DNA of 64,000 nt, taken from assembly GCF_006345805.1 (NCBI RefSeq), contig NC_043002.1, forward strand, positions 107,384,001-107,448,000. The letters run 5' to 3'. A model generated the notes under the pieces. That model made no database searches, was not told where the DNA came from, and was given only the letters and a program-made list of their open reading frames with translations. Below, in pieces: positions 15,713 to 60,794 of this stretch. Each line of letters begins with the position of its first letter. Position 1 is the stretch's first letter. A program made the position numbers and the translations under genes. The stretch comes from Octopus sinensis (taxonomy: Eukaryota).

Positions 15713-16784
15713 CTTGTAGTTTTTCCAGTATTATATTGCGAAGTCTTTTGCCAAGTTGAAAGACTGCCAGAGATTCAAAGTATCTTCATCTGACTTGCAG
15801 CTCTGTCTCCTGTTTCTACAATTCTATTTATTTTGCTATTATTACATAAAATTCATGAAACAACACACTACCAACAGTAGAGCACCAGGCTAAATGATGT
15901 ACAGCAGTTGATAGGGTTCCATCTCTCTACATTGTGAGTTCAAATCTCACCAGGGTTAGACTTTTGTATTCCATCCTTAAGTACAAGCCAATTCAGTCAC
16001 TAGAAATAATAACTAAGCCTTTCTCATATCACCTCCTGTAGTCTCAAACATAGAAGGCCACATTGAATAATGTAGTCTGAGATAAACTGTGTCTGGAGAA
16101 AAATAACATGTTCACAGCTTCGATGCCTTTGAACATTGGGTCTACTTGATCAAAGGGAGCTGCCCTGGGGCTGGGGTAAACAGCAATAACAATGGCTGAG
16201 AGTCGTTGATGTTGGAGTCAGCAGAGTCACGGATCACCCAGCCACAGATGAAGTGTTGAAGATTCATATCTAGCTCCATGTGCTGTGAAGCAGCTACAGC
16301 CAAGATATTTCTCTCTCACTGTCTCAGTCTTTATAGCTCTAAATAAGTTCCATAAGGAGGTACAATTTACTTGTTTCAACAGTGAGAGTTCATTATGTGC
16401 TAAGGAATGGTTTCATTGTTTGGTGAACAAAATTTAACCCAGTCCCAGCTCGAAGCCCCCTGTCTGTAGTCTCCTAACAACTTGTGTTTCTATTCAAGTT
16501 TTGATTCTGTACATCAATAGCTTGTGGTGCCTTAAATTCACAAAATACTATTTCATGTTAAACTCATTGTCTTTCATACTTGAGAAATAACCAAGAAGAC
16601 GTGTGTGTGCGCGCGTATATGCATGTGTGTGTGTGTGGATGCAGTTGTCAGATCTATGACGAAAGGCATTTCAGCCATTGCTTCTCTGTTGTTTTAGAAT
16701 ACAACAATCCCTTGACTATCATGGGTGCTATGTTCCAAAACCCCTGCGTAGGTGAAAATCTGCAAAGTCAAAACAGTACTGTAT

Positions 16785-16921
16785 CATCATTGTTTAACGT
16801 CTGTTTTCCATGCTAGCATGGGTTGGACGGTTCGACCGGGGTCTGGGAAGCCAGGGGCTGCACCAGGTTCCAGTCTGATCTGGCAGTATTTCTACAGCTT
16901 GATGCCCTTCCTAACACCAAC
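16785..16921 (-). mobile_element. RTE-type 3' tail (SINE family D 3' part)
   Basis: gttggtgttaggaagggcatc...cccatgctagcatggaaaacagacgttaaac(aat/gat)n matches family D and the known RTE 3' motif ggaagggcatcc. Confidence 0.85.
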
Positions 16922-16932
16922 AAAATGTGTGA

Positions 16933-17051
16933 TGCTTACAGCACCTAGGTTTCCCAAGCGGTCACCCATCTAAGTACTGACTAGGCTCGATGTTGCTTAA
17001 CTTTGGTGATCGGACGAGAACCGGTGCTTTCAACGTGATATGGCCGTAAGC
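16933..17051 (-). rRNA. 5S rRNA: Full-length 5S rRNA sequence (119 nt), probably a retroposed copy
   Basis: GCTTACGGCCATATCACGTTGAAAGCACCGGTTCTCGTCCGATCACCAAAGTTAAGCAACATCGAGCCTAGTCAGTACTTAGATGGGTGACCGCTTGGGAAACCTAGGTGCTGTAAGCA; helix I pairs, box A and box C are recognisable, and a T4 lies 7 nt downstream. Two apparent CpG transitions suggest a pseudogene. Confidence 0.9.
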
Positions 17052-19204
17052 AATACTGTATATTTTATTATTATTACTTTTATAATTTGTATATATTTAT
17101 TTTATTTTAAATGCAAAACAACACCATGGAGGAATTGATGTAAGCTTAAATAATAATCTGGGATAGGTGAACCACGATATGGCTAGGGATTACTGTATGT
17201 CTGCCATTCCATTATCCAATCTGTCTTTTACCTTAAGATATTTTGAGGTAGATTTAGCTGCTAATTCTTGTTGGTCAAGCTACCAAACAGAGGTTTTTCC
17301 ATTGGATTATGTTTTTGTTTATGTTTAGTGTCACACCAGCTCTGATCCAGATGTTCTAGCCATGACCATCCTGTTGAGTTTTTTTTTCTTTTCTTCTTTT
17401 AGAACTCTTTTTTTAAGACAAAGTATATGATTTGAGGGAGATTTGCTTGCTATTTTCACCAAGAGACTTCATAGAGGTTTCGTCATTGTACGTTTGAGTG
17501 TGTGTGAAAAATTAGATAACCAAAAACAAAAGTATTGTCTGACATGTTTCTATATTTAACGGTGAATTTTGGGTGAAATAGCTTCCCAGTTTGGGAAGAA
17601 ATTCCTGGACCTCCCCCTTCATCCTTTCATCATGCCATTTATAAACATAATTACACTTTAATAGTAGGCATCATCCATCCGACAATGACTCAAAGATATA
17701 TGGCAGAAATATAGCCACAACTTGGAGCACAAACCAACAACTACAACATCAACAACAGCACCACAAGTAACAATTTATGTTTTTTTTAAGACCTTTTGTG
17801 GTGACATTATCAATTTTCATTCAGTTTGATTCCCAGGAAATGCTAGTTATTTGTCTGTAAAAATAGAGAATAAAAATAAATAGAAATGTTCTAAAGGCTT
17901 TTGTATTTAACATTTTGACACTAAATATGCTGCAGAGATATATCTTCGCATTACAATAGAGAGAGAGAGAGAGAGAAAGAAAACCAGGCTTGGCTTCTGC
18001 GGCCTCTCTTGCAGCTTCTCTTTTTTTTTCTATTTTTTTGTTTTCTTTTCTAATGGTTTCTTTGGAAAAGCTGAATATTTTCCATTACTATGTTTGTGGT
18101 GTGTGTGTGTGTGTGTGTGTGTGTATGAGGAGTAGATAGACAGCCGACAACTGATGAAGGGTCGTTCTTTATGTTACTCGTCCTGTTTTCGTGTTTTCAA
18201 TTTTCCCTCATTGTTTGTGTATTGAACTCATTTGTTTTCGTATTTCATGTTGTTTACTGTTGGTGACGTCCTGTATCCATATAAACTGGAGCCTGATGCA
18301 GCTGCTGACTCTCCAGACCTCAGTCAAACCATCCAACCCATGCCAGCATGGAAAACAGACGTTAAATGATGATGATAAGGATAATATATATATATTATTT
18401 ATATTATTATATATTATGTATATATATAAAATCATCATTTACCATTTGTCTGCCATACTGGCATGGGTTGAATGGTTCACTGTTTGCTTTAGCAAGGTTC
18501 CTATGGCTGGATGCCCTACCTAATCCCATCCAATCATTTTACAGAGTTTATTGGGTGCCTTTTTATTATGACACCAGCCCCACTGAGGTTGCCGGATAAT
18601 TTGCGAGACAAAGAACAAAAGTAAAGCTCCCTTGATTGAATAGGAGTGCATTAGAGAGGGAGGTGGCTTTAAGTCAGATAGTTGTGGGAAGCTAAACTAT
18701 GAGAGAGGGACAGGAACAGGTGGCCTACTGCAGAGAAAATAAATGGCTACTTCACTTGATATAGGATTGGAGAAAGTTGCTGGAAAGAAGATGGTGGTGA
18801 CTAGGTGTCAGAGCATACTCTCAAGCTACAAGAATGTGAATGTAAGGGACAATACAGACAGAGGATCAGGAGGAGTCTGAATAAGTTTATTGGTCTAAGA
18901 GGAGAGCGACAAGTGGTTAGAAATGAGGGCAGAGGTTAATGTAGTGAATATTGTACAAGGGTGGATGTGGAGTCAAAGGCAGAAATCAAAATATCAGCAA
19001 AGAGTGTGGAGTATGTAAAAGAAATACTCCAGGAGGAATTGAGTGATAAGTGACAATACAGGAAGGGAGTGTAGAGGGCAGCCATCTAATAAACCCAGTG
19101 AATCAGAAAATAAGGTGATAATGTGTGGGGCTGGGACAGTATGATGATTAGGGTGGGGAGACATGTACAAGGACAGATTTGTGTGTTGTGTAAAATATTA
19201 ACAA

Positions 19205-21504: not shown

Positions 21505-21856
21505 ATTAGATGCCAGCGCCGCCTCGACTGGCTTCCGTGTCGGTGGCACGTAAAAAGCACCATCCAAATCGTGGCCGAAGCCAGTGCCACCTCAACTGGC
21601 TTCCGTGCAGGTGGCACGTAAAATGCACCAATCCGACCGTGGCCAATGCCAGCCTCGCCTGGCACCAGTGCAGGTGGCACGTAAAAAGCACCCACTACAC
21701 TCATGGAGTGGTTGGCGTTAGGAAGGGCATCCAGCTGTAGAAACATTGCCAGATAAGACCGGAGCCTGGTGCAGCCTTCTGGCTTCCCAGATCCCCGGTC
21801 GAACTGTCCAACCCATGCTAGCATGGAGAATGGACGTTAAACGATGATGATGATGA
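21505..21856 (+). mobile_element. SINE family D (RTE-type tail, (GAT)n end) with diverged internal tandem units
   Basis: Three diverged ...ggtggcacgtaaaa... units, then the RTE tail and gatgatgat. Other copies at ~10857, 12165, 18270, 24590, 28432, 35575, 38550 and 41505. Confidence 0.8.
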
Positions 21857-23697: not shown

Positions 23698-25494
23698 TGT
23701 ATAATATAATGGTTGTTGTTATTTAGCCCCGGGTTACCCCTGTTTGAGTAGATCTATGATTAGTAACTTTCCAGCTGTGACCAACACAATCCATTTTTCT
23801 TTTCTATTTTATTGAGATATAACGTATCTAATTTATGTTTTATAAGTTATATTCTGCTACTTGTGCCCAGAACATTAGGAAGAAGATATAAGCAGATAGG
23901 AATGAGTTGTTAGGCTATAATGAGATAAGTAGAGTTGATCTTTATCCCAAGCAGCAAAGAAGGCCCTCATGGGGCTTAATATCAGAACAAGACTAAATCT
24001 ATGGATATGATCCACATTTATTTTTCATAATTCCCATTTTATTGTAAATAGTGTGTCTTAAAGGTTTCTTACCTTTTTGTTATGGAGTCACTTGATCTGC
24101 TAGATATAGCAAATGACTTCAATTTCTTCATATCACAACCTACCATCTTAAAGAGAAATCTCATTGGTTAATAATGTGTTTATAGTTTAAGATGGTTGGC
24201 AGTGATATGAGGGAGTTAGGATTGGTTGCTATCTCTAGCAGATTGAGTGACTCCATAAAGAAGTGGTAAGGAACCCCTCACCTGTTTTCAAGTTCTCTAG
24301 CAGATTGAGTGACTCCATAAAGAAGGGTAAGGAACCCCTTACCTGTGTTCGAGTTTCAAATCACCAGTTTATGAAGGGTCTAAAAATCCTCTGGGAAAGA
24401 ACAGTTTAAGCCTTGAGATCAAACAGCAATTTGATACAAGTTACATCACGTATGAATTAAAGAGCTTTTAGATTTCCCAGCACAGAAGCACTGCACCTTC
24501 AGATTTCTGTGTACTTGAAATTTATCTATGGGGCTAAAATGCTTCCCAACCCTTGCTGTTAAAGGTTTCTTTAACACTGTCACACTGTCATCATCATCAT
24601 CATCATCATCGTTTAACGTCCATTTTCCGTGCTAGCACGGGTTGGACAGTTCGACCGGGGTCTGGGAAGCCAGGGGCTGCACCAGGCTCCAGTCTGATCT
24701 GGTAGAGTTTCTACAGCTGGATGCCCTTCCTAACGCCAACCACTCCGCGAGTGTAGTGGGTGCTTTTTAAGTGCCACCATTCATAGAAAAAGAAGATGCA
24801 ACCAATTCTGTCTGTTTGTCTGCCAGCAATCATTACTCTTCAGCTGTATATGCAATAATTTTAATCTTTTGTGTGGGAGCCCAGGTAGAGGATAAAGTTA
24901 GACACAGGGGCCCAAGTCTGAGAGGTTTAATGGTGAAAAATAGTGGTAGAGCCCAAAGCTCTCTAAAGGGTTAAAATGCTGTCTGCTGAAAGAAGTATAT
25001 TTGAAGGAACATCATTATGTTTAGAATATATTTTTGTTGATTTAATTTTATTTAAAGCAGGGGTGGGGAAGCCTTTTAGTGGGGTGAGCAAAAATTTCCT
25101 AAAAAGAGGTCTACAGGTGGATCAAGAGTTCTAACTTTGATATCTGTGTAAATCTTGTATATATAGGCACATGGTTCCAGGTTCAGTCCCACTGCGTGGC
25201 ACTTTGGGCCTTGTGTGTGGATTTAGTAGATGGAAGCTGAAAGAGGCTTCCATTGTTGGTGTGTTTATGTCCCCGTAACTTAGCAGTTCGGCAAAAGAGA
25301 CGGAAAGAATAAGTACTAGGCTTACAAAGAATAAGTCCTGGGGTTGATTTGTTCAACTAAAGGTGGTGCTCCAGCATGGCCACTCTCAAATGACTGAAAC
25401 AAATAAAAGAATAAAAGAATACCTATGTATAATTTGATATACGTTAATAAAGATAAGTGTAACACATTAAATTAATGCCTAACATCTTCATTAA

Positions 25495-28431: not shown

Positions 28432-28965
28432 ATCATCATCATCATCATCGTTTAACGTCCGCTTTTCATGCTAGCATGGGTTGGACGGTTCAACTGGGGT
28501 CTGGGGAGCCAGAAGGGTGCACCAGGCCAGTCAGATCTGGCAGTGTTTCTACAGCTGGATGCCCTTCCTAATGCCAACCACTCCGTGAGTGTAGTAGGTG
28601 CTTTTTATGTGCCACCGACACAGGTGCCAGACGAGGCTGGCGAACGGCCACGCTCGGATGGTGTTTTTTATGTGCCACCGACACAGGTGCCAGACGAGGT
28701 TGGCGAACGGCCACGCTCGGATGGTGTTTTTTTTATGTGCCACCGACACAGGTGCCAGACGAGGCTGGCGAACGGCCACGCTCGGATGGTGTTTTTTATG
28801 TGCCACCGACACAGGTGCCAGACGAGGTTGGCGAACGGCCACGCTCGGATGGTGTTTTTTTTATGTGCCACCGACACAGGTGCCAGACGAGGCTGGCGAA
28901 CGGCCACGCTCGGATGGTGTTTTTTATGTGCCACCGACCCAGGTGCCAGACGAGGCTGGCGACAC
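28432..28965 (-). mobile_element. SINE family D with an internal 63/65-bp tandem array (28607-28963)
   Basis: RTE-type tail plus five full units and one partial unit. Confidence 0.85.
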
Positions 28966-34022: not shown

Positions 34023-34383
34023 TTATATATGTATATATGTTTGTATGTATGTATGTATGTCAGTCATTGTTCAGTTTTATTTCAAGTTTCTTTCCAATAG
34101 AGAAAGAGCCGGTTTCTAACCTTGATCCAAGGCTCCTTCATTGAAATTTCAACATCAACAACAGGGTATTTTTGTTTGTATGTATGTATGTATGTTTGTA
34201 ATGTTTTGCTTTAAGTATGTATTCTCATGCATATAGTTGCATATCTAGACATGCTCATATATATTTAAATGGTAAACTTCTGGAAAGTTTTACAGATTTT
34301 TACAGTTCCAGTGATGGATTGGATCTGTAGACGTTGAATCAGATTAATTATGATGGTAATAATAATAATAATACATAAAATAC

Positions 34384-35056
34384 AGAAAAGACAACACAGC
34401 AGAAAGTGATGTGCAGAATCTGTGGACAAAACAGTGAAACCGTATGGCATATTACCAGCCAATGTATGCCACTAGCCCAGAAAGGATATAAGAGGTGCTA
34501 TGACAATACAGCAAGGATTGTCCATTGGACACTTTGCAACAAGTATGGACTTGACAGAGCAAAAAATTGGTACAACCACAAACCTGAAGACACCGTCGAA
34601 AATAGAAATGCAAAGATCCTATGGGATTTTATGATTCAGTGCGACCATGAGATAGAGAATAGGAAACCAGACATAGTTTCTTGAGAAAGAAAACAAACTA
34701 TGCTGGATCATAGATATAGCATGCCCAGCTGACAACAGGGTATGCGATAAGGAAGAAAGAAAAGTTGAGAGATATGACAGGTTAGCTTGGGAAGTTAAGC
34801 AGTTGTGGTCGAGGAAAAAAGTAGCAGTAGTACCAATAATTGTTGGAGCCCTGGGAACAGTGAGCAAAACTCTTGAGAAGTACATGGAAAAAATAGGGGC
34901 TGCAATAAGGGTGGAGCACTTGCAGAAAACAGCACTGCTTGGAACCGCTCGAATACTCTGGAAGGTGCTCGAAAAATAAGAGGTGTTACCTTAGTTCACT
35001 TGTAGTGAACAGCTGATACTGTAATACATCTCCTGTGTTAGGAGCTGTGCAAAGGC
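34384..35056 (+). mobile_element. R4/Dong-clade non-LTR retrotransposon, 5'-truncated (CCHC plus restriction-like endonuclease)
   Basis: CRICG...ETVWHITSQC...KILWDFMIQCDHEIENRKPDIV, one frameshift, then CWIIDIACP...KVERY...VPIIVGALGTV...LQKTALLGTARIL*; (TAA)n on both sides. Confidence 0.85.
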
Positions 35057-52757: not shown

Positions 52758-53053
52758 ATAAAATAAAAACATGATGCGAAGGATTCAGCGGTACATATGT
52801 TTCGGGCCTTTATTAGACAGATTTATAACAATGCATAATGTATGTCTGTGGCTTCTTCAGCCGCGCACAACAGCTTCCACAAGGACATGTGTTACATCAT
52901 GTGTTACATTTGATGTAACACATGTCCTTGCGGAAGCTGTTGTGCGCGGCTGAAGAAGGCCACAGACATACATTATGCATTGTTATAAATCTGTCTAATA
53001 AAGGCCCGAAACATATGTACCGCTGAATCCTTCGCATCATGTTTTTATTTTAT
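52758..53053. repeat. ~296-bp near-perfect palindrome (family H3) carrying hammerhead motifs
   Basis: Arms 52758-52899 and 52911-53053 differ by one substitution and one indel that I could see; 11-nt spacer. Confidence 0.9.
52946..53023 (+). ncRNA. Type-I hammerhead motif
   Basis: gcgg CTGAAGA A GGCC..41 nt..GGCC C GAAA C atat GTA ccgc: GUA triplet, palindromic stem III (ACATATGT), stem I gcgg/ccgc. Confidence 0.65.
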
Positions 53054-53084
53054 ATATATATATATATTATATATATATATATAT

Positions 53085-53919
53085 ATTGGCACACAAAGGT
53101 AAATGACGTGAAGACTGGATACACTGGCCCAGGAAGAATTGCAATCCCTGAGTCAAAATCAGTGCGTGACCTGGGCATTGACATGAGCAATGATGCATCT
53201 TTCCAAATGCATATTGCTAATCTGGTGATAAAAGCCAGACGGCTAGCTGGATGGATTCTCCGAACTTTCAGAACAAGAGAGAAGGAGACACTGATGGTCC
53301 TATGGAAAACATTTGTCCTCAGCCGCTTGGACTACTGCTCCCAATTTTGGTCACCACACAATATAAAACAAACAGCAGAACTCGAAGCAACTCAGAGAAG
53401 CTACACAAAGAAAATCGTCTCAATGCAAAATGTCAGCTACTGGGAAAGACTGAAGGTATTAACCTCTTCTCCCTGGAGCGGAGGCGGAGAGATATGCAGT
53501 GATATACATCTGGAAAATCCTGGAGGGTCTTGTCCCAAACTTTGGCATTCAAAGTTACTCCAACCGCAGAACGGGGCGCCGCTGCGTGGTGCCAAGGATT
53601 CCAACATCACCATCAAAATACAGGTCCAGATACTGCAACAGCTTGGGTTTCAGAGGACCACAGCTCTTAACATCCTCCCTAAATGCCTGAGAGACTTACA
53701 TGGTGTGGATGTGGGTTTCTTTAAAACTAAACTGGATCTCTTCTTGTTGGGAGTCCCAGATGAACCTACCTCACGACAGGAGACACGGATGCGGGCAGCA
53801 GCATCGAACTCCCTTGTTGATCAAGTGCCACGTATCAGAGGTGGATTCACAAACTAGTGTAGCTCATTCAGCGGTGGTGCCCCAGCATGGCCGCGGCCTT
53901 CGGGCTAAAACATTTTTAA

Positions 53920-58310: not shown

Positions 58311-59939
58311 ATTTGATTATTTTCTTGTTCTTTTTCATGAAAATTATATAATAAACATTTTGTTGAGTCTGAAAACCAAAATGAATCTGGACAGAAGAAC
58401 GATAACGAAATTTAACAAACTAATTGAAATCTGACTCCGACCCGTGTAAACAAAACGATAACAATAACACGAATACTCCTTTCTACTCTTGACACAATGC
58501 CTGAAATTTTGCGGTCACATCGACCCCCAGCGCTCGTTTGGTATTTATTCTAAGTTGAAGGCGGCGAGCTGGCAGAAACGTTAGCACACCTGGCGAAATG
58601 CTTAACGTTATTTCGTCTGCCGTTACGTTCTGAATTCAAATTCCGCCGAGGTCGACTTTGCCTTTCATCCTTTCGGGGTCGATAAATTAAGTACCAGTTA
58701 CGCACTGGGGTCGATGTAATCGACTTAATCCGTTTGTCTGTCCTTGTTCGTCCCCTCTGTGTTTAGCCCCTTGTGGTCAATAAAGAAATAGGTATTTATT
58801 CTATCGATCCCGAGAGGATGAAAGGTAAAGTCGACCTCGGCAGAATTTGAACTCAGAACGTAAAGAGCCGAAAGAATGCCGCTAAATATTTTGTTTGGTG
58901 CTCTACCGATTCTGCGGATTTCGTTGTATTAAAAAACTGGTCCCTCCCAGCAAATTTTCGTTCCTTGTGCCTAGAGTAGAAATTACTATAGGCACAAGGC
59001 ACAAAATTTTGCTGGGAATGGCCAGTGCTTGACTGGTACTTTATTTTATCGACCCGAAAATTGATAACTTATTAATTTGGGTGTTAATTACAAACTGTGG
59101 AGGCGCAATGGCCCAGTGGTTAGGGCAGCGGACTCGCGGTCATAGGATCGCGGTTTCGATTCCCAGACATCTAAAAGCTCCACGAGGCTCCGGCAGGGGA
59201 TGGTGGTGATCCCTGCTGTATTCTTTCACCACAACTTTCTCTCACTCTTACTTCCTGTTTCTGTTGTACTTGTATTTCAAAGGGCCGGCCTTGTCACTCT
59301 CTCTGTCACGCTGAATATCCCCGAGAACTACGTTAAGGGTACACGTGTCTGTGGAGTGCTCAGCCACTTACACGTTAATTTCACGAGCAGGCTGTTCCGT
59401 TGATTCGGATCAACCGGAACCCTCGTCGTCGTAACCGACGGAGTGCTTCCATCAATTACATACTATGTAAGACAGTGGTCCTGTATTGCTTATTACATAT
59501 CATTTACTAATTTATTATGACTGTTGACATTGAATATTTACAGTACTGTAGCGAAGTTGTAAAAGTCAAAAACAATTATTTTTTTTTACTATTTCCTATT
59601 CAAAGGTAAGAAATCAGTAAATAAACGTCCTCAATATTATGATTGATTTGACTCAAGTTCCTCCATATTCCTGGTAGAATTTATGTGGGTAGCGGGTTAC
59701 TACCCATAACCTTAAGCATCCACAAGCTTTCAATAGTCTTTCAAGTGTTTAAAACAACCCTCCAGGTAATCTTTCCTGTCCCTTAGAAGCAAATTTTCTG
59801 TCGAAGCTTCATAGGGTATTCTATTCCAGTCTCCTTCAACCATTTGTCTGTATCTTTGCTTTTAGTTCCTTTACAATTGTCGTATTCCAAATTCTTGCAA
59901 ATTTCGAATTTTAAGGGATTAGATCATTATATTATTATT

Positions 59940-60743
59940 ATTATTATATTATTATTATTATTATTATTGGAGTGGCTGTGTGGTAAGTAGCTTGCTTACC
60001 AACCACATGGTTCCGGGTTCAGTCCCACTGCGTGGCACCTTGGGCAAGTGTCTTCTACTATAGCCTCGGGCCGACCAATGCCTTGTGAGTGGATTTGGTA
60101 GATGGAAACTGAAAGAAGCCCGTCGTATATATGTATATATATATATATATGCGTGTGTGTGTTTGTGTGTCTGTGTTTGTCCCCCTAGCATTGCTTGACA
60201 ACCGATGCTGGTGTGTTTATGTCCCCGTTACTTAGCAGTTCGGCGGCAAAAGAGACCGATAGAATAAGTACTGGGCTTACAAAAGAATAAGTCCCGGGGT
60301 CGAGTTGCAAGTAAAAGAGAGTAAAATAGTATTATTATTATTATATTATTATTATTATTATATATTATTATTATTATTATTATTGGAGTGGCTGTGTGGT
60401 AAGTAGCTTGCTTACCAACCACATGGTTCCGGGTTCAGTCCCACTGCGTGGCACCTTGGGCAAGTGTCTTCTACTATAGCCTCGGGCCGACCAATGCCTT
60501 GTGAGTGGATTTGGTAGATGGAAACTGAAAGAAGCCCGTCGTATATATGTATATATATATATATATGCGTGTGTGTGTTTGTGTGTCTGTGTTTGTCCCC
60601 CTAGCATTGCTTGACAACCGATGCTGGTGTGTTTATGTCCCCGTTACTTAGCAGTTCGGCGGCAAAAGAGACCGATAGAATAAGTACTGGGCTTACAAAA
60701 GAATAAGTCCCGGGGTCGAGTTGCAAGTAAAAGAGAGTAAAAT

Positions 60744-60793
<50 letters not shown>
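59940..60793 (+). repeat. Tandem duplication (416-bp period) of a tail-deleted SINE A, bounded by (TAT)n
   Basis: Identical minus-strand ORFs at 59964 and 60380; both units share the ttcggcggcaaa insertion and the tail deletion. Confidence 0.9.

Positions 60794-60794
<1 letters not shown>

What the first reader, a model, noticed from the sequence alone, without database searches (positions are those of the whole stretch)
16775..17061. 5S rRNA fused to an RTE 3' tail inside one TSD: a 5S-headed (SINE3-like) chimeric retroposon
Seen: on the minus strand a complete 119-nt 5S, then tcacacatttt, then ~135 nt of RTE-type tail with its (GAT)-type end. A 10-bp direct repeat (agtactgtat 16775-16784, aatactgtat 17052-17061; 9/10) flanks the whole unit. 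Established: 5S-derived SINE3s and U6-L1 template-switch chimeras exist in vertebrates. Inference: this is either a one-off RT template switch onto 5S RNA or a member of an RTE-mobilised 5S-SINE family, which I do not know from cephalopods.
Basis: partly seen in the sequence, partly recalled or inferred. Interest (0 to 1): 0.8.

Follow-up and report, generated by a model that had tools for sequence, protein, structure and literature searches.

The report
5S rRNA–SINE chimeric retrocopy in octopus
A complete copy of 5S ribosomal RNA was reverse-transcribed together with the back half of a common octopus SINE and pasted into the genome in one event; this kind of chimera is already known from other animals, and it is now a decaying pseudogene.

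Summary
On the minus strand there is a full-length 5S rRNA (17051..16933; Rfam 108 bits). It is followed by an 11-nt spacer TCACACATTTT (16932..16922), then the last ~137 nt of an abundant octopus SINE (16921..16785) ending in a short (GAT)n. The whole unit is flanked by a 9/10 direct repeat. A match that good at those boundaries has a chance of about 0.002 in this window. The tail alone has no flanking repeat.

The 5S part ends in a T4 run, which is a Pol III terminator. That is what an unprocessed 5S primary transcript joined at the RNA/cDNA level would look like, as in U6/L1 chimeras. Both halves show comparable CpG decay, so this is an old, non-functional retrocopy and not a 5S gene.

I could not search an octopus genome, so one-off chimera versus amplified 5S-headed SINE family stays open. 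The internal terminator and an ordinary tail favour a dead-on-arrival or founder-type chimera (about 0.5). A published automated annotation lists roughly 1,000 "SINE/5S" copies per octopus genome, so a family stays plausible (about 0.35). The "RTE" label for the tail is plausible but untested.

5S heads on tails shared with tRNA-SINEs are already described (HaSE3, CoeSINE5). This is a new member of a known kind, of modest interest.

The parts
17052..17061 (-). 5' copy of the target-site duplication (minus strand ATACAGTATT). It abuts nucleotide 1 of the 5S directly.
   Evidence: 9/10 match to 16775-16784. Chance is about 3e-4 at the exact offset and about 2e-3 with +/-3 nt slack.
16933..17051 (-). 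Complete 5S rRNA copy (119 nt), now a pseudogene. 32 of 34 model base pairs are canonical. The two broken pairs (C17.A61 and C29.A48) are both CpG-to-CpA changes.
   Evidence: Rfam RF00001, 108 bits, model 1-120, not truncated. (pair-by-pair count).
16922..16932 (-). Spacer TCACACA plus TTTT. I read it as the 3' trailer of a 5S primary transcript ending in the Pol III terminator T-run (16925..16922). It does not derive from the SINE.
   Evidence: sequence; other SINE copies read ...CACTACACTCACGGAGTG at this place and show no similarity to the spacer. That a T4 run is a Pol III terminator is established knowledge. That this is the native octopus 5S trailer is inference.
16785..16921 (-). 3' ~137 nt of a common octopus SINE (GTTGGTGTTAGGAAGGGCATC ... 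CATGCTAGCATGGAAAACAGACGTTAAACAATGATGAT), 5'-truncated relative to ordinary copies, with a short (GAT)n end.
   Evidence: It differs from a 9-copy consensus at 8 of 141 columns, 3 of them CpG transitions. Ordinary copies differ at 6-10.
16775..16784 (-). 3' copy of the target-site duplication (minus strand ATACAGTACT). Its first two bases, AT, continue the (GAT)n register, giving 1-2 nt of microhomology between target and template 3' end.
   Evidence: Microhomology of 1-2 nt and the link between the first TSD base and the 3' microsatellite are described for RTE-related retroposons in PMC6007223.

Best explanation
This is a single retroposition event that inserted a chimeric cDNA.

Proposed sequence of events:
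1. A LINE reverse transcriptase, probably of the RTE clade (inferred), started target-primed reverse transcription on the 3' end of a SINE RNA at an AT-rich target.
2. It copied about 137 nt of the SINE.
3. It then continued on a 5S rRNA molecule, either by template switching or because the two RNAs had been ligated.
4. It ran to nucleotide 1 of the 5S.

The 5S template was an unprocessed Pol III primary transcript. It carries a 7-nt trailer and ends in the terminator U-run, which is why TTTT sits exactly at the junction.

The insertion made an 8-10 bp target-site duplication. Since then both halves have decayed at CpGs, so the copy is a pseudogene.

The T4 terminator lies between the 5S promoter and the SINE tail. 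Pol III transcripts started in this copy would therefore mostly stop before reaching the tail that the LINE machinery needs. I therefore think it is most likely a dead-on-arrival one-off or founder-type chimera, comparable to U6/L1 chimeras, and not a copy from a successful SINE family.

Shown: the anatomy, the TSD, the decay, and the lack of SINE homology in the spacer. Inferred: the RNA-level joining, the primary-transcript origin of the spacer, RTE as the enzyme, and one-off status.
For: - The 5S is full length, in the same orientation as the SINE part, and begins directly after the TSD.
- A 9/10 TSD flanks the whole unit, and none flanks the tail alone.
- The junction lies inside the SINE. 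All 10 other copies examined continue upstream with ...CACTACACTCACGGAGTG|GTTGG and then 63-68-nt tandem units, never with 5S.
- The spacer has no SINE homology and ends in T4 exactly at the junction. This is the architecture of U6/L1 chimeras: small RNA full-length, 5' of and in sense to the retroelement 3' end, flanked by TSDs, and not self-propagating (PMC11838501).
- The tail is 5.7% from the consensus, within the range of ordinary copies. It shares the CC-CCTGG one-base-deletion variant with the ordinary copy at 24740, so it shows no sign of a separate lineage.
- The decay is equal in kind in both halves: two CpG-to-CpA changes that break 5S helices, and three CpG transitions in the tail.
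- There is only one 5S in 64 kb, so this is not a 5S array.
Against: - No octopus genome could be searched, so uniqueness of the junction is not shown.
- A published automated annotation counts about 1,095 SINE/5S and about 778 SINE/5S-Core-RTE copies in O. bimaculoides and about 996 SINE/5S in O. vulgaris (computed from PMC8967140 Tables S2/S3). 5S-headed repeat families may therefore exist, and this could be one of their copies.
- T4 is a leaky terminator, so an element with it could still be mobilised.
- I could not verify that TCACACATTTT is the native flank of octopus 5S genes.
- The partner LINE was not identified.
Confidence: 0.5

Rival explanations
1. This is an ordinary, aged copy of an amplified 5S-headed SINE family of octopods (5S head, SINE body and tail). 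The family would have been founded by the same kind of template switch and then propagated from one or more master copies.
For: - Automated annotation reports about 1,000 SINE/5S copies in each of two Octopus genomes, plus a 5S-Core-RTE class in O. bimaculoides (PMC8967140 Table S2/S3).
- Exact precedents exist. HaSE3 shares body and tail with the tRNA-SINE HaSE1 and is RTE-tailed (PMC3272025). CoeSINE5 and SINE-1_Pmo are 5S heads on RTE-derived sequence (PMC5786205).
- One of 8 tails in this window is 5S-headed.
- The copy is about as diverged as other SINE copies, as expected for a family member from the same burst.
Against: - A TTTT terminator lies between head and tail. It would truncate most Pol III transcripts before the tail.
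- 0 of 10 other tails in 84 kb carry 5S.
- The tail has no private diagnostic changes and shares a variant with an ordinary copy.
- The annotated SINE/5S classes are machine labels with unknown sequence. They may have other tails or may be plain 5S pseudogenes.
Confidence: 0.35
2. Two separate events: a pre-existing dispersed 5S gene or pseudogene with its own terminator, next to which a 5'-truncated SINE later inserted, or a DNA-level rearrangement that joined them.
For: The spacer looks like a normal gene trailer plus terminator. A TATA-like TATAAAAG lies at -33..-26 upstream of the 5S (17084..17077), as upstream of many invertebrate 5S genes (recalled from general knowledge).
Against: - No TSD flanks the tail alone; the best is 4 of 5. 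A 9/10 repeat brackets the whole unit exactly at 5S nucleotide 1 and at the SINE 3' end.
- The TATA-like motif lies outside the TSD in generally AT-rich DNA.
- 5S alone lacks the 3' tail that stringent LINEs require.
Confidence: 0.08
3. It is a functional, dispersed 5S rRNA gene, and the neighbouring SINE is irrelevant.
For: Full-length 5S at 108 bits, helix I and helices IV/V intact, and a terminator present.
Against: - Two helix-breaking C.A mismatches, both CpG decay.
- A single copy with no array.
- The TSD starts exactly at nucleotide 1, so any upstream control region was not co-inserted.
Confidence: 0.03

Closest known systems
U6/L1 and 5S/L1 chimeric retrocopies of mammals (template-switch or RNA-ligation chimeras; Buzdin-type; census in PMC11838501)
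   Same: A small Pol III RNA sits 5' of, and in sense to, the 3' part of a retroelement. One TSD flanks the pair. The small RNA is full-length and ends in its U-run at the junction. The chimeras are not self-propagating.
   Different: Here the 3' partner is a SINE and not the LINE itself. The enzyme is presumably a stringent microsatellite-tailed LINE (RTE-like) and not L1, and the host is a mollusc. Human 5S/L1 chimeras are mostly antisense and truncated, whereas this one is sense and complete, so it is more like U6/L1.
HaSE3 of Helicoverpa armigera (5S-derived SINE that shares body and 3' tail with the tRNA-SINE HaSE1; the tail matches the LINE HaRTE1.1; PMC3272025)
   Same: A 5S head is joined to the body and tail of a resident non-5S SINE. 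The proposed origin is template switching from SINE RNA to 5S rRNA. TSDs of 8-19 bp are reported.
   Different: HaSE3 is a family seen in several loci and species. Here only one locus is known. This copy keeps a T4 terminator between head and body, and no partner LINE has been identified.
SINE3 / 5S-Deu-L2 SINEs (zebrafish SINE3, AmnSINE1) and other 5S-RTE SINEs (CoeSINE5, SINE-1_Pmo; PMC5786205)
   Same: A 5S head with an internal type-1 promoter, followed by a SINE body. From memory, the start of the octopus tail (GTTAGGAAGGGCATCC...) resembles the Deu/Nin-DC conserved domain that follows the 5S head in SINE3. This is a lead that I could not test.
   Different: Those are established multi-copy families whose 5S parts have diverged. 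Here the 5S is a near-intact octopus-type 5S with its terminator, which points to a recent and independent fusion.

Membership tests
Small-RNA/retroelement chimeric retrocopy (U6/L1-type) | Two unrelated RNA-derived parts in the same orientation, with the small RNA 5' and the retroelement 3' end 3' | tested here: met
   5S at 17051..16933 and SINE 3' part at 16921..16785, both on the minus strand.
Small-RNA/retroelement chimeric retrocopy (U6/L1-type) | One target-site duplication flanks the whole chimera, and none flanks a part | tested here: met
   (9/10, chance about 2e-3). (tail alone, best 4/5).
Small-RNA/retroelement chimeric retrocopy (U6/L1-type) | The small RNA is complete and ends at its native transcript 3' end (U-run) at the junction | tested here: inconclusive
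   The 5S is complete and T4 sits at the junction. Whether TCACACA-T4 is the native trailer of octopus 5S genes could not be checked, because no octopus 5S rDNA was obtainable.
Small-RNA/retroelement chimeric retrocopy (U6/L1-type) | The junction is unique in the genome (not propagated) | not testable with these tools
   No octopus genome is searchable. Pattern scans of the metagenome, prokaryote and viral collections found nothing, but those collections do not hold octopus DNA.
5S-derived SINE family (SINE3 sensu Kapitonov & Jurka) | 5S-derived head that covers the internal control region | tested here: met
   full model match 1-120, so the box A/IE/C region (about 50-97) is present.
5S-derived SINE family (SINE3 sensu Kapitonov & Jurka) | Many dispersed copies with the same head-body junction and different TSDs | tested here: inconclusive
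   0 of 10 other tails in 84 kb carry 5S, which has too little power. The literature lists about 1,000 machine-labelled SINE/5S copies per octopus genome, with no sequence available.
5S-derived SINE family (SINE3 sensu Kapitonov & Jurka) | Pol III can transcribe from the head through to the tail (no internal terminator) | tested here: not met
   TTTT at 16925..16922 lies between head and tail. T4 can be leaky, so this lowers the family reading but does not exclude it.
5S-derived SINE family (SINE3 sensu Kapitonov & Jurka) | The 3' tail is shared with a partner LINE (claimed here: RTE) | not tested
   No LINE with this 3' end is present in the window or in L001. RTE-BovB is the most abundant octopus LINE, and microsatellite ends are typical of RTE relatives. 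These are circumstantial only.
Functional 5S rRNA gene | All helices intact, and member of an array or multi-copy set | tested here: not met
   Two C.A mismatches from CpG decay. A single 5S in 64 kb.
Deu / Nin-DC SINE superfamily (for the tail's source SINE) | Carries the conserved Deu/Nin-DC central domain | not testable with these tools
   The resemblance of GTTAGGAAGGGCATCC... is recalled only. No reference sequence is held. Indirect support: tRNA-Deu makes up 15% of O. bimaculoides repeats.

The most novel reading that the evidence does not exclude
The locus is a copy of, or the founder-type state of, a 5S-headed SINE lineage that is or was active in octopods. It would have arisen independently of vertebrate SINE3 by fusing a complete 5S primary transcript to the conserved (Deu/Nin-DC-like) body and microsatellite tail of the resident SINE. 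It would propagate despite an internal T4 terminator, through Pol III read-through or Pol II co-transcription. That would be a convergent re-creation of the 5S-Deu architecture in a protostome, caught close to its birth.
Probability: 0.3. Interest if true: 0.5.

Novelty: new member of a known kind. Interest (0 to 1): 0.3.

Why it matters
New SINE families are thought to arise when a reverse transcriptase switches from a SINE or LINE template to a small Pol III RNA, but the first product of that switch is seldom seen. This locus shows that state clearly: a complete 5S with its trailer and terminator, a mid-SINE junction and one TSD.

If the junction turns out to be multi-copy, it would give molluscs a described 5S-headed SINE. 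It would also put a sequence to the unexamined "SINE/5S" labels in octopus repeat annotations.

If the junction is unique, it documents template-switch chimeras made by a non-L1 (probably RTE-type) machinery in a cephalopod. Either way it is a small addition to an established picture. For annotation, this 5S should be flagged as a retropseudogene and not as an rRNA gene.

Tried and rejected
- Spurious-ORF search. I searched a 73-aa ORF that spans tail, junction and 5S against 5.8 billion proteins, hoping to catch other copies. The only hit was one O. vulgaris hypothetical protein covering the tail alone. The protein collection does not hold raw octopus ORFs, so the method has no power here.
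- Pattern scans. I scanned for the junction and for the octopus-type 5S 3' end in the metagenome, prokaryote-genome and viral collections. All returned 0. This is uninformative, because those collections hold no octopus DNA.
- Orthologous empty site through a neighbouring gene. 145 non-repeat ORFs from the window had no Pfam hit. Two long window ORFs are not on record. The route is closed.
- Paralogous empty site. Both flanks are unique in the window.
- Harvesting more octopus loci with the RT fragment at 53027-53854. The hits were mostly short ENA contigs plus Argonauta, with no Octopus loci. One O. vulgaris locus, L001, was obtained through P0001. It added 3 tails, and none carried 5S.
- Spacer as diverged SINE sequence. 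Rejected: there is no alignment to ...CACTCACGGAGTG.
- tRNA head for the source SINE. None was detected by ARAGORN or by Rfam at E<=1.
- Published octopus 5S rRNA sequence. The paper (PMC326244) is not held.
- Text searches for the tail motif in papers found nothing.

Full report
**What is there**

Read on the minus strand, window 17061..16775 has five parts:
- ATACAGTATT (17061..17052).
- A 119-nt 5S rRNA (17051..16933).
- TCACACATTTT (16932..16922).
- 137 nt beginning GTTGGTGTTAGGAAGGGCATC and ending ...GACGTTAAACAATGATGAT (16921..16785).
- ATACAGTACT (16784..16775).

Rfam's 5S model matches end to end, positions 1-120, at 108 bits against a gathering score of 38. It is the only family above threshold in the 64 kb. 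This is therefore a solitary 5S and not part of an array.

**The 3' part is a piece of a common SINE**

Two motifs from the 3' part recur 5 and 8 times in the window, where none is expected by chance. BLAST finds seven further copies at 75-91% identity. Three more lie in a 20-kb Octopus vulgaris locus that I fetched through a SINE-derived hypothetical protein.

In every other copy the sequence upstream of GTTGG continues as ...GGTGGCACGTAAAAAGCACCCACTACACTCACGGAGTG. Upstream of that come 63-68-nt tandem units. The 5S is therefore joined inside the SINE, 18 nt downstream of the start of its unique 3' region.

The 11-nt spacer shows no similarity to the SINE sequence it replaces. I found no tRNA-like head for this SINE. 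Calling it tRNA-derived, or calling its tail RTE-derived, is not supported by anything I could run.

**One insertion event**

The 10-mers that abut 5S nucleotide 1 and the SINE 3' end match at 9 of 10. In this window, non-low-complexity 10-mers at that spacing match that well at a rate of about 3e-4 per position, or about 2e-3 with +/-3 nt of slack. No repeat flanks the tail alone; the best is 4 of 5.

The 3' TSD copy begins with AT, in register with the (GAT)n end. This is the 1-2 nt target/template microhomology described for RTE-related retroposons (PMC6007223). Both flanks are unique in the window.

**Pseudogene of ordinary age**

32 of the 34 base pairs of the 5S model are canonical. The two exceptions, C17.A61 and C29.A48, are both CpG-to-CpA changes. 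The source 5S was therefore structurally sound, and the copy has since decayed.

The tail differs from a nine-copy consensus at 8 of 141 columns, three of them CpG transitions. Ordinary copies differ at 6-10 columns. The tail also shares a one-base deletion variant with the ordinary copy at 24740. Both halves look equally old, and the tail shows no lineage of its own.

**Mechanism**

The spacer ends in TTTT exactly at the junction. A run of four or more T is the Pol III terminator (established knowledge). Some protostome 5S genes, Drosophila for example, make a precursor with a 3' trailer of about 15 nt (recalled).

The simplest reading is that the 5S template was an unprocessed primary transcript, joined by its U-run to the SINE sequence at the RNA/cDNA level. 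That could happen by a reverse transcriptase switching templates during target-primed reverse transcription, or by prior RNA ligation. This is the architecture of mammalian U6/L1 chimeras: small RNA full-length, sense, 5' of the retroelement 3' end, TSD-flanked and not self-propagating (PMC11838501).

A DNA-level join would have no reason to fall at the end of the T-run.

**One-off or family**

I could not search an octopus genome. Pattern scans of the collections on hand returned nothing, but they contain no octopus DNA. The protein-space trick had no power. No conserved gene in the window gave a route to orthologous loci.

For a one-off:
- The T4 between the 5S promoter and the tail would end most Pol III transcripts before the part the LINE machinery recognises.
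- The tail is an ordinary subfamily member.
- 0 of 10 other tails carry 5S.

For a family:
- Table S2 of PMC8967140 lists SINE/5S at 0.0301% of 3,637,615 elements in O. bimaculoides, about 1,095 copies.
- The same table lists SINE/5S-Core-RTE at 0.0214%, about 778 copies.
- It lists SINE/5S at 0.0387% in O. vulgaris, about 996 copies.

These are machine labels without sequences, but they raise the prior that 5S-headed repeats exist in octopus. I put one-off or founder-type at about 0.5, family member at about 0.35, two-step origin at about 0.08 and functional gene at about 0.03.

**Comparison with known elements**

5S heads on the body and tail of a resident SINE, mobilised by RTE-type LINEs, are already described:
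- HaSE3 shares body and tail with the tRNA-SINE HaSE1 in Helicoverpa. Its authors attribute it to a template switch from SINE RNA to 5S rRNA (PMC3272025).
- CoeSINE5 and SINE-1_Pmo are 5S heads on RTE-derived sequence (PMC5786205).

From memory, the start of the octopus tail resembles the Deu/Nin-DC conserved domain, which follows the 5S head in zebrafish SINE3. I could not test this. It would be consistent with tRNA-Deu SINEs making up 15% of O. bimaculoides repeats.

Whichever reading is right, this is a new member of a known kind.

**Verdict**

The RTE label and family status are open. Interest is modest. For annotation, this 5S should be treated as a retropseudogene.

Noticed in passing
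window 28597-28962 (-) and 21512-21692 (+): The SINE that donated the tail carries a variable number of 63-68-nt tandem units in its 5' part. There are 5.7 units at 95% identity in one copy and 2.7 units in another. No tRNA-like head was detectable by ARAGORN or by Rfam at E<=1. This is an unusual build for a SINE.
   Followed up: partly
window 17077-17084 (-): TATAAAAG lies at -33..-26 upstream of the 5S start, outside the TSD, so it belongs to the target DNA. It could by accident supply the upstream element that many invertebrate 5S genes use. It is probably chance in AT-rich sequence.
   Followed up: no
window 18285-18377 (+) and 18431-18478 (-): Two partial tails of the same SINE lie in inverted orientation and form a long hairpin. 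Rfam scores it weakly as miRNA-precursor-like (mir-2513, 41.6 bits against a gathering score of 89). It is a repeat-derived hairpin and not a supported miRNA.
   Followed up: no
window 53027-53854 (+): A 276-codon open frame encodes the C-terminal part of a LINE reverse transcriptase. The best hits carry PF00078. The closest named relative is from Argonauta hians at 46% identity, and no Octopus protein appeared among the hits. Its 3' end does not match the SINE tail, so it is not the partner LINE.
   Followed up: partly
window 34379-34976 (+): Two adjacent frameshifted ORFs (NTEKTTQQKVMCRICG... and FLEKENKLCWIIDIACPADN...) look like the conserved C-terminal region of another non-LTR retrotransposon protein. 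They had no Pfam hit.
   Followed up: no
window 59923-60794: A tandem duplication with a period of about 415 bp and 98.9% identity. It contains a copy of the other abundant SINE in the window and an A/T-rich run.
   Followed up: no
whole window: At least 37% of the window matches another part of itself. A second, more abundant SINE, whose translations recur as ...PRSGTEPGTMW..., has well over ten copies and matches L001 13541-13789 at 90-94%. No conserved protein-coding exon was detected.
   Followed up: partly
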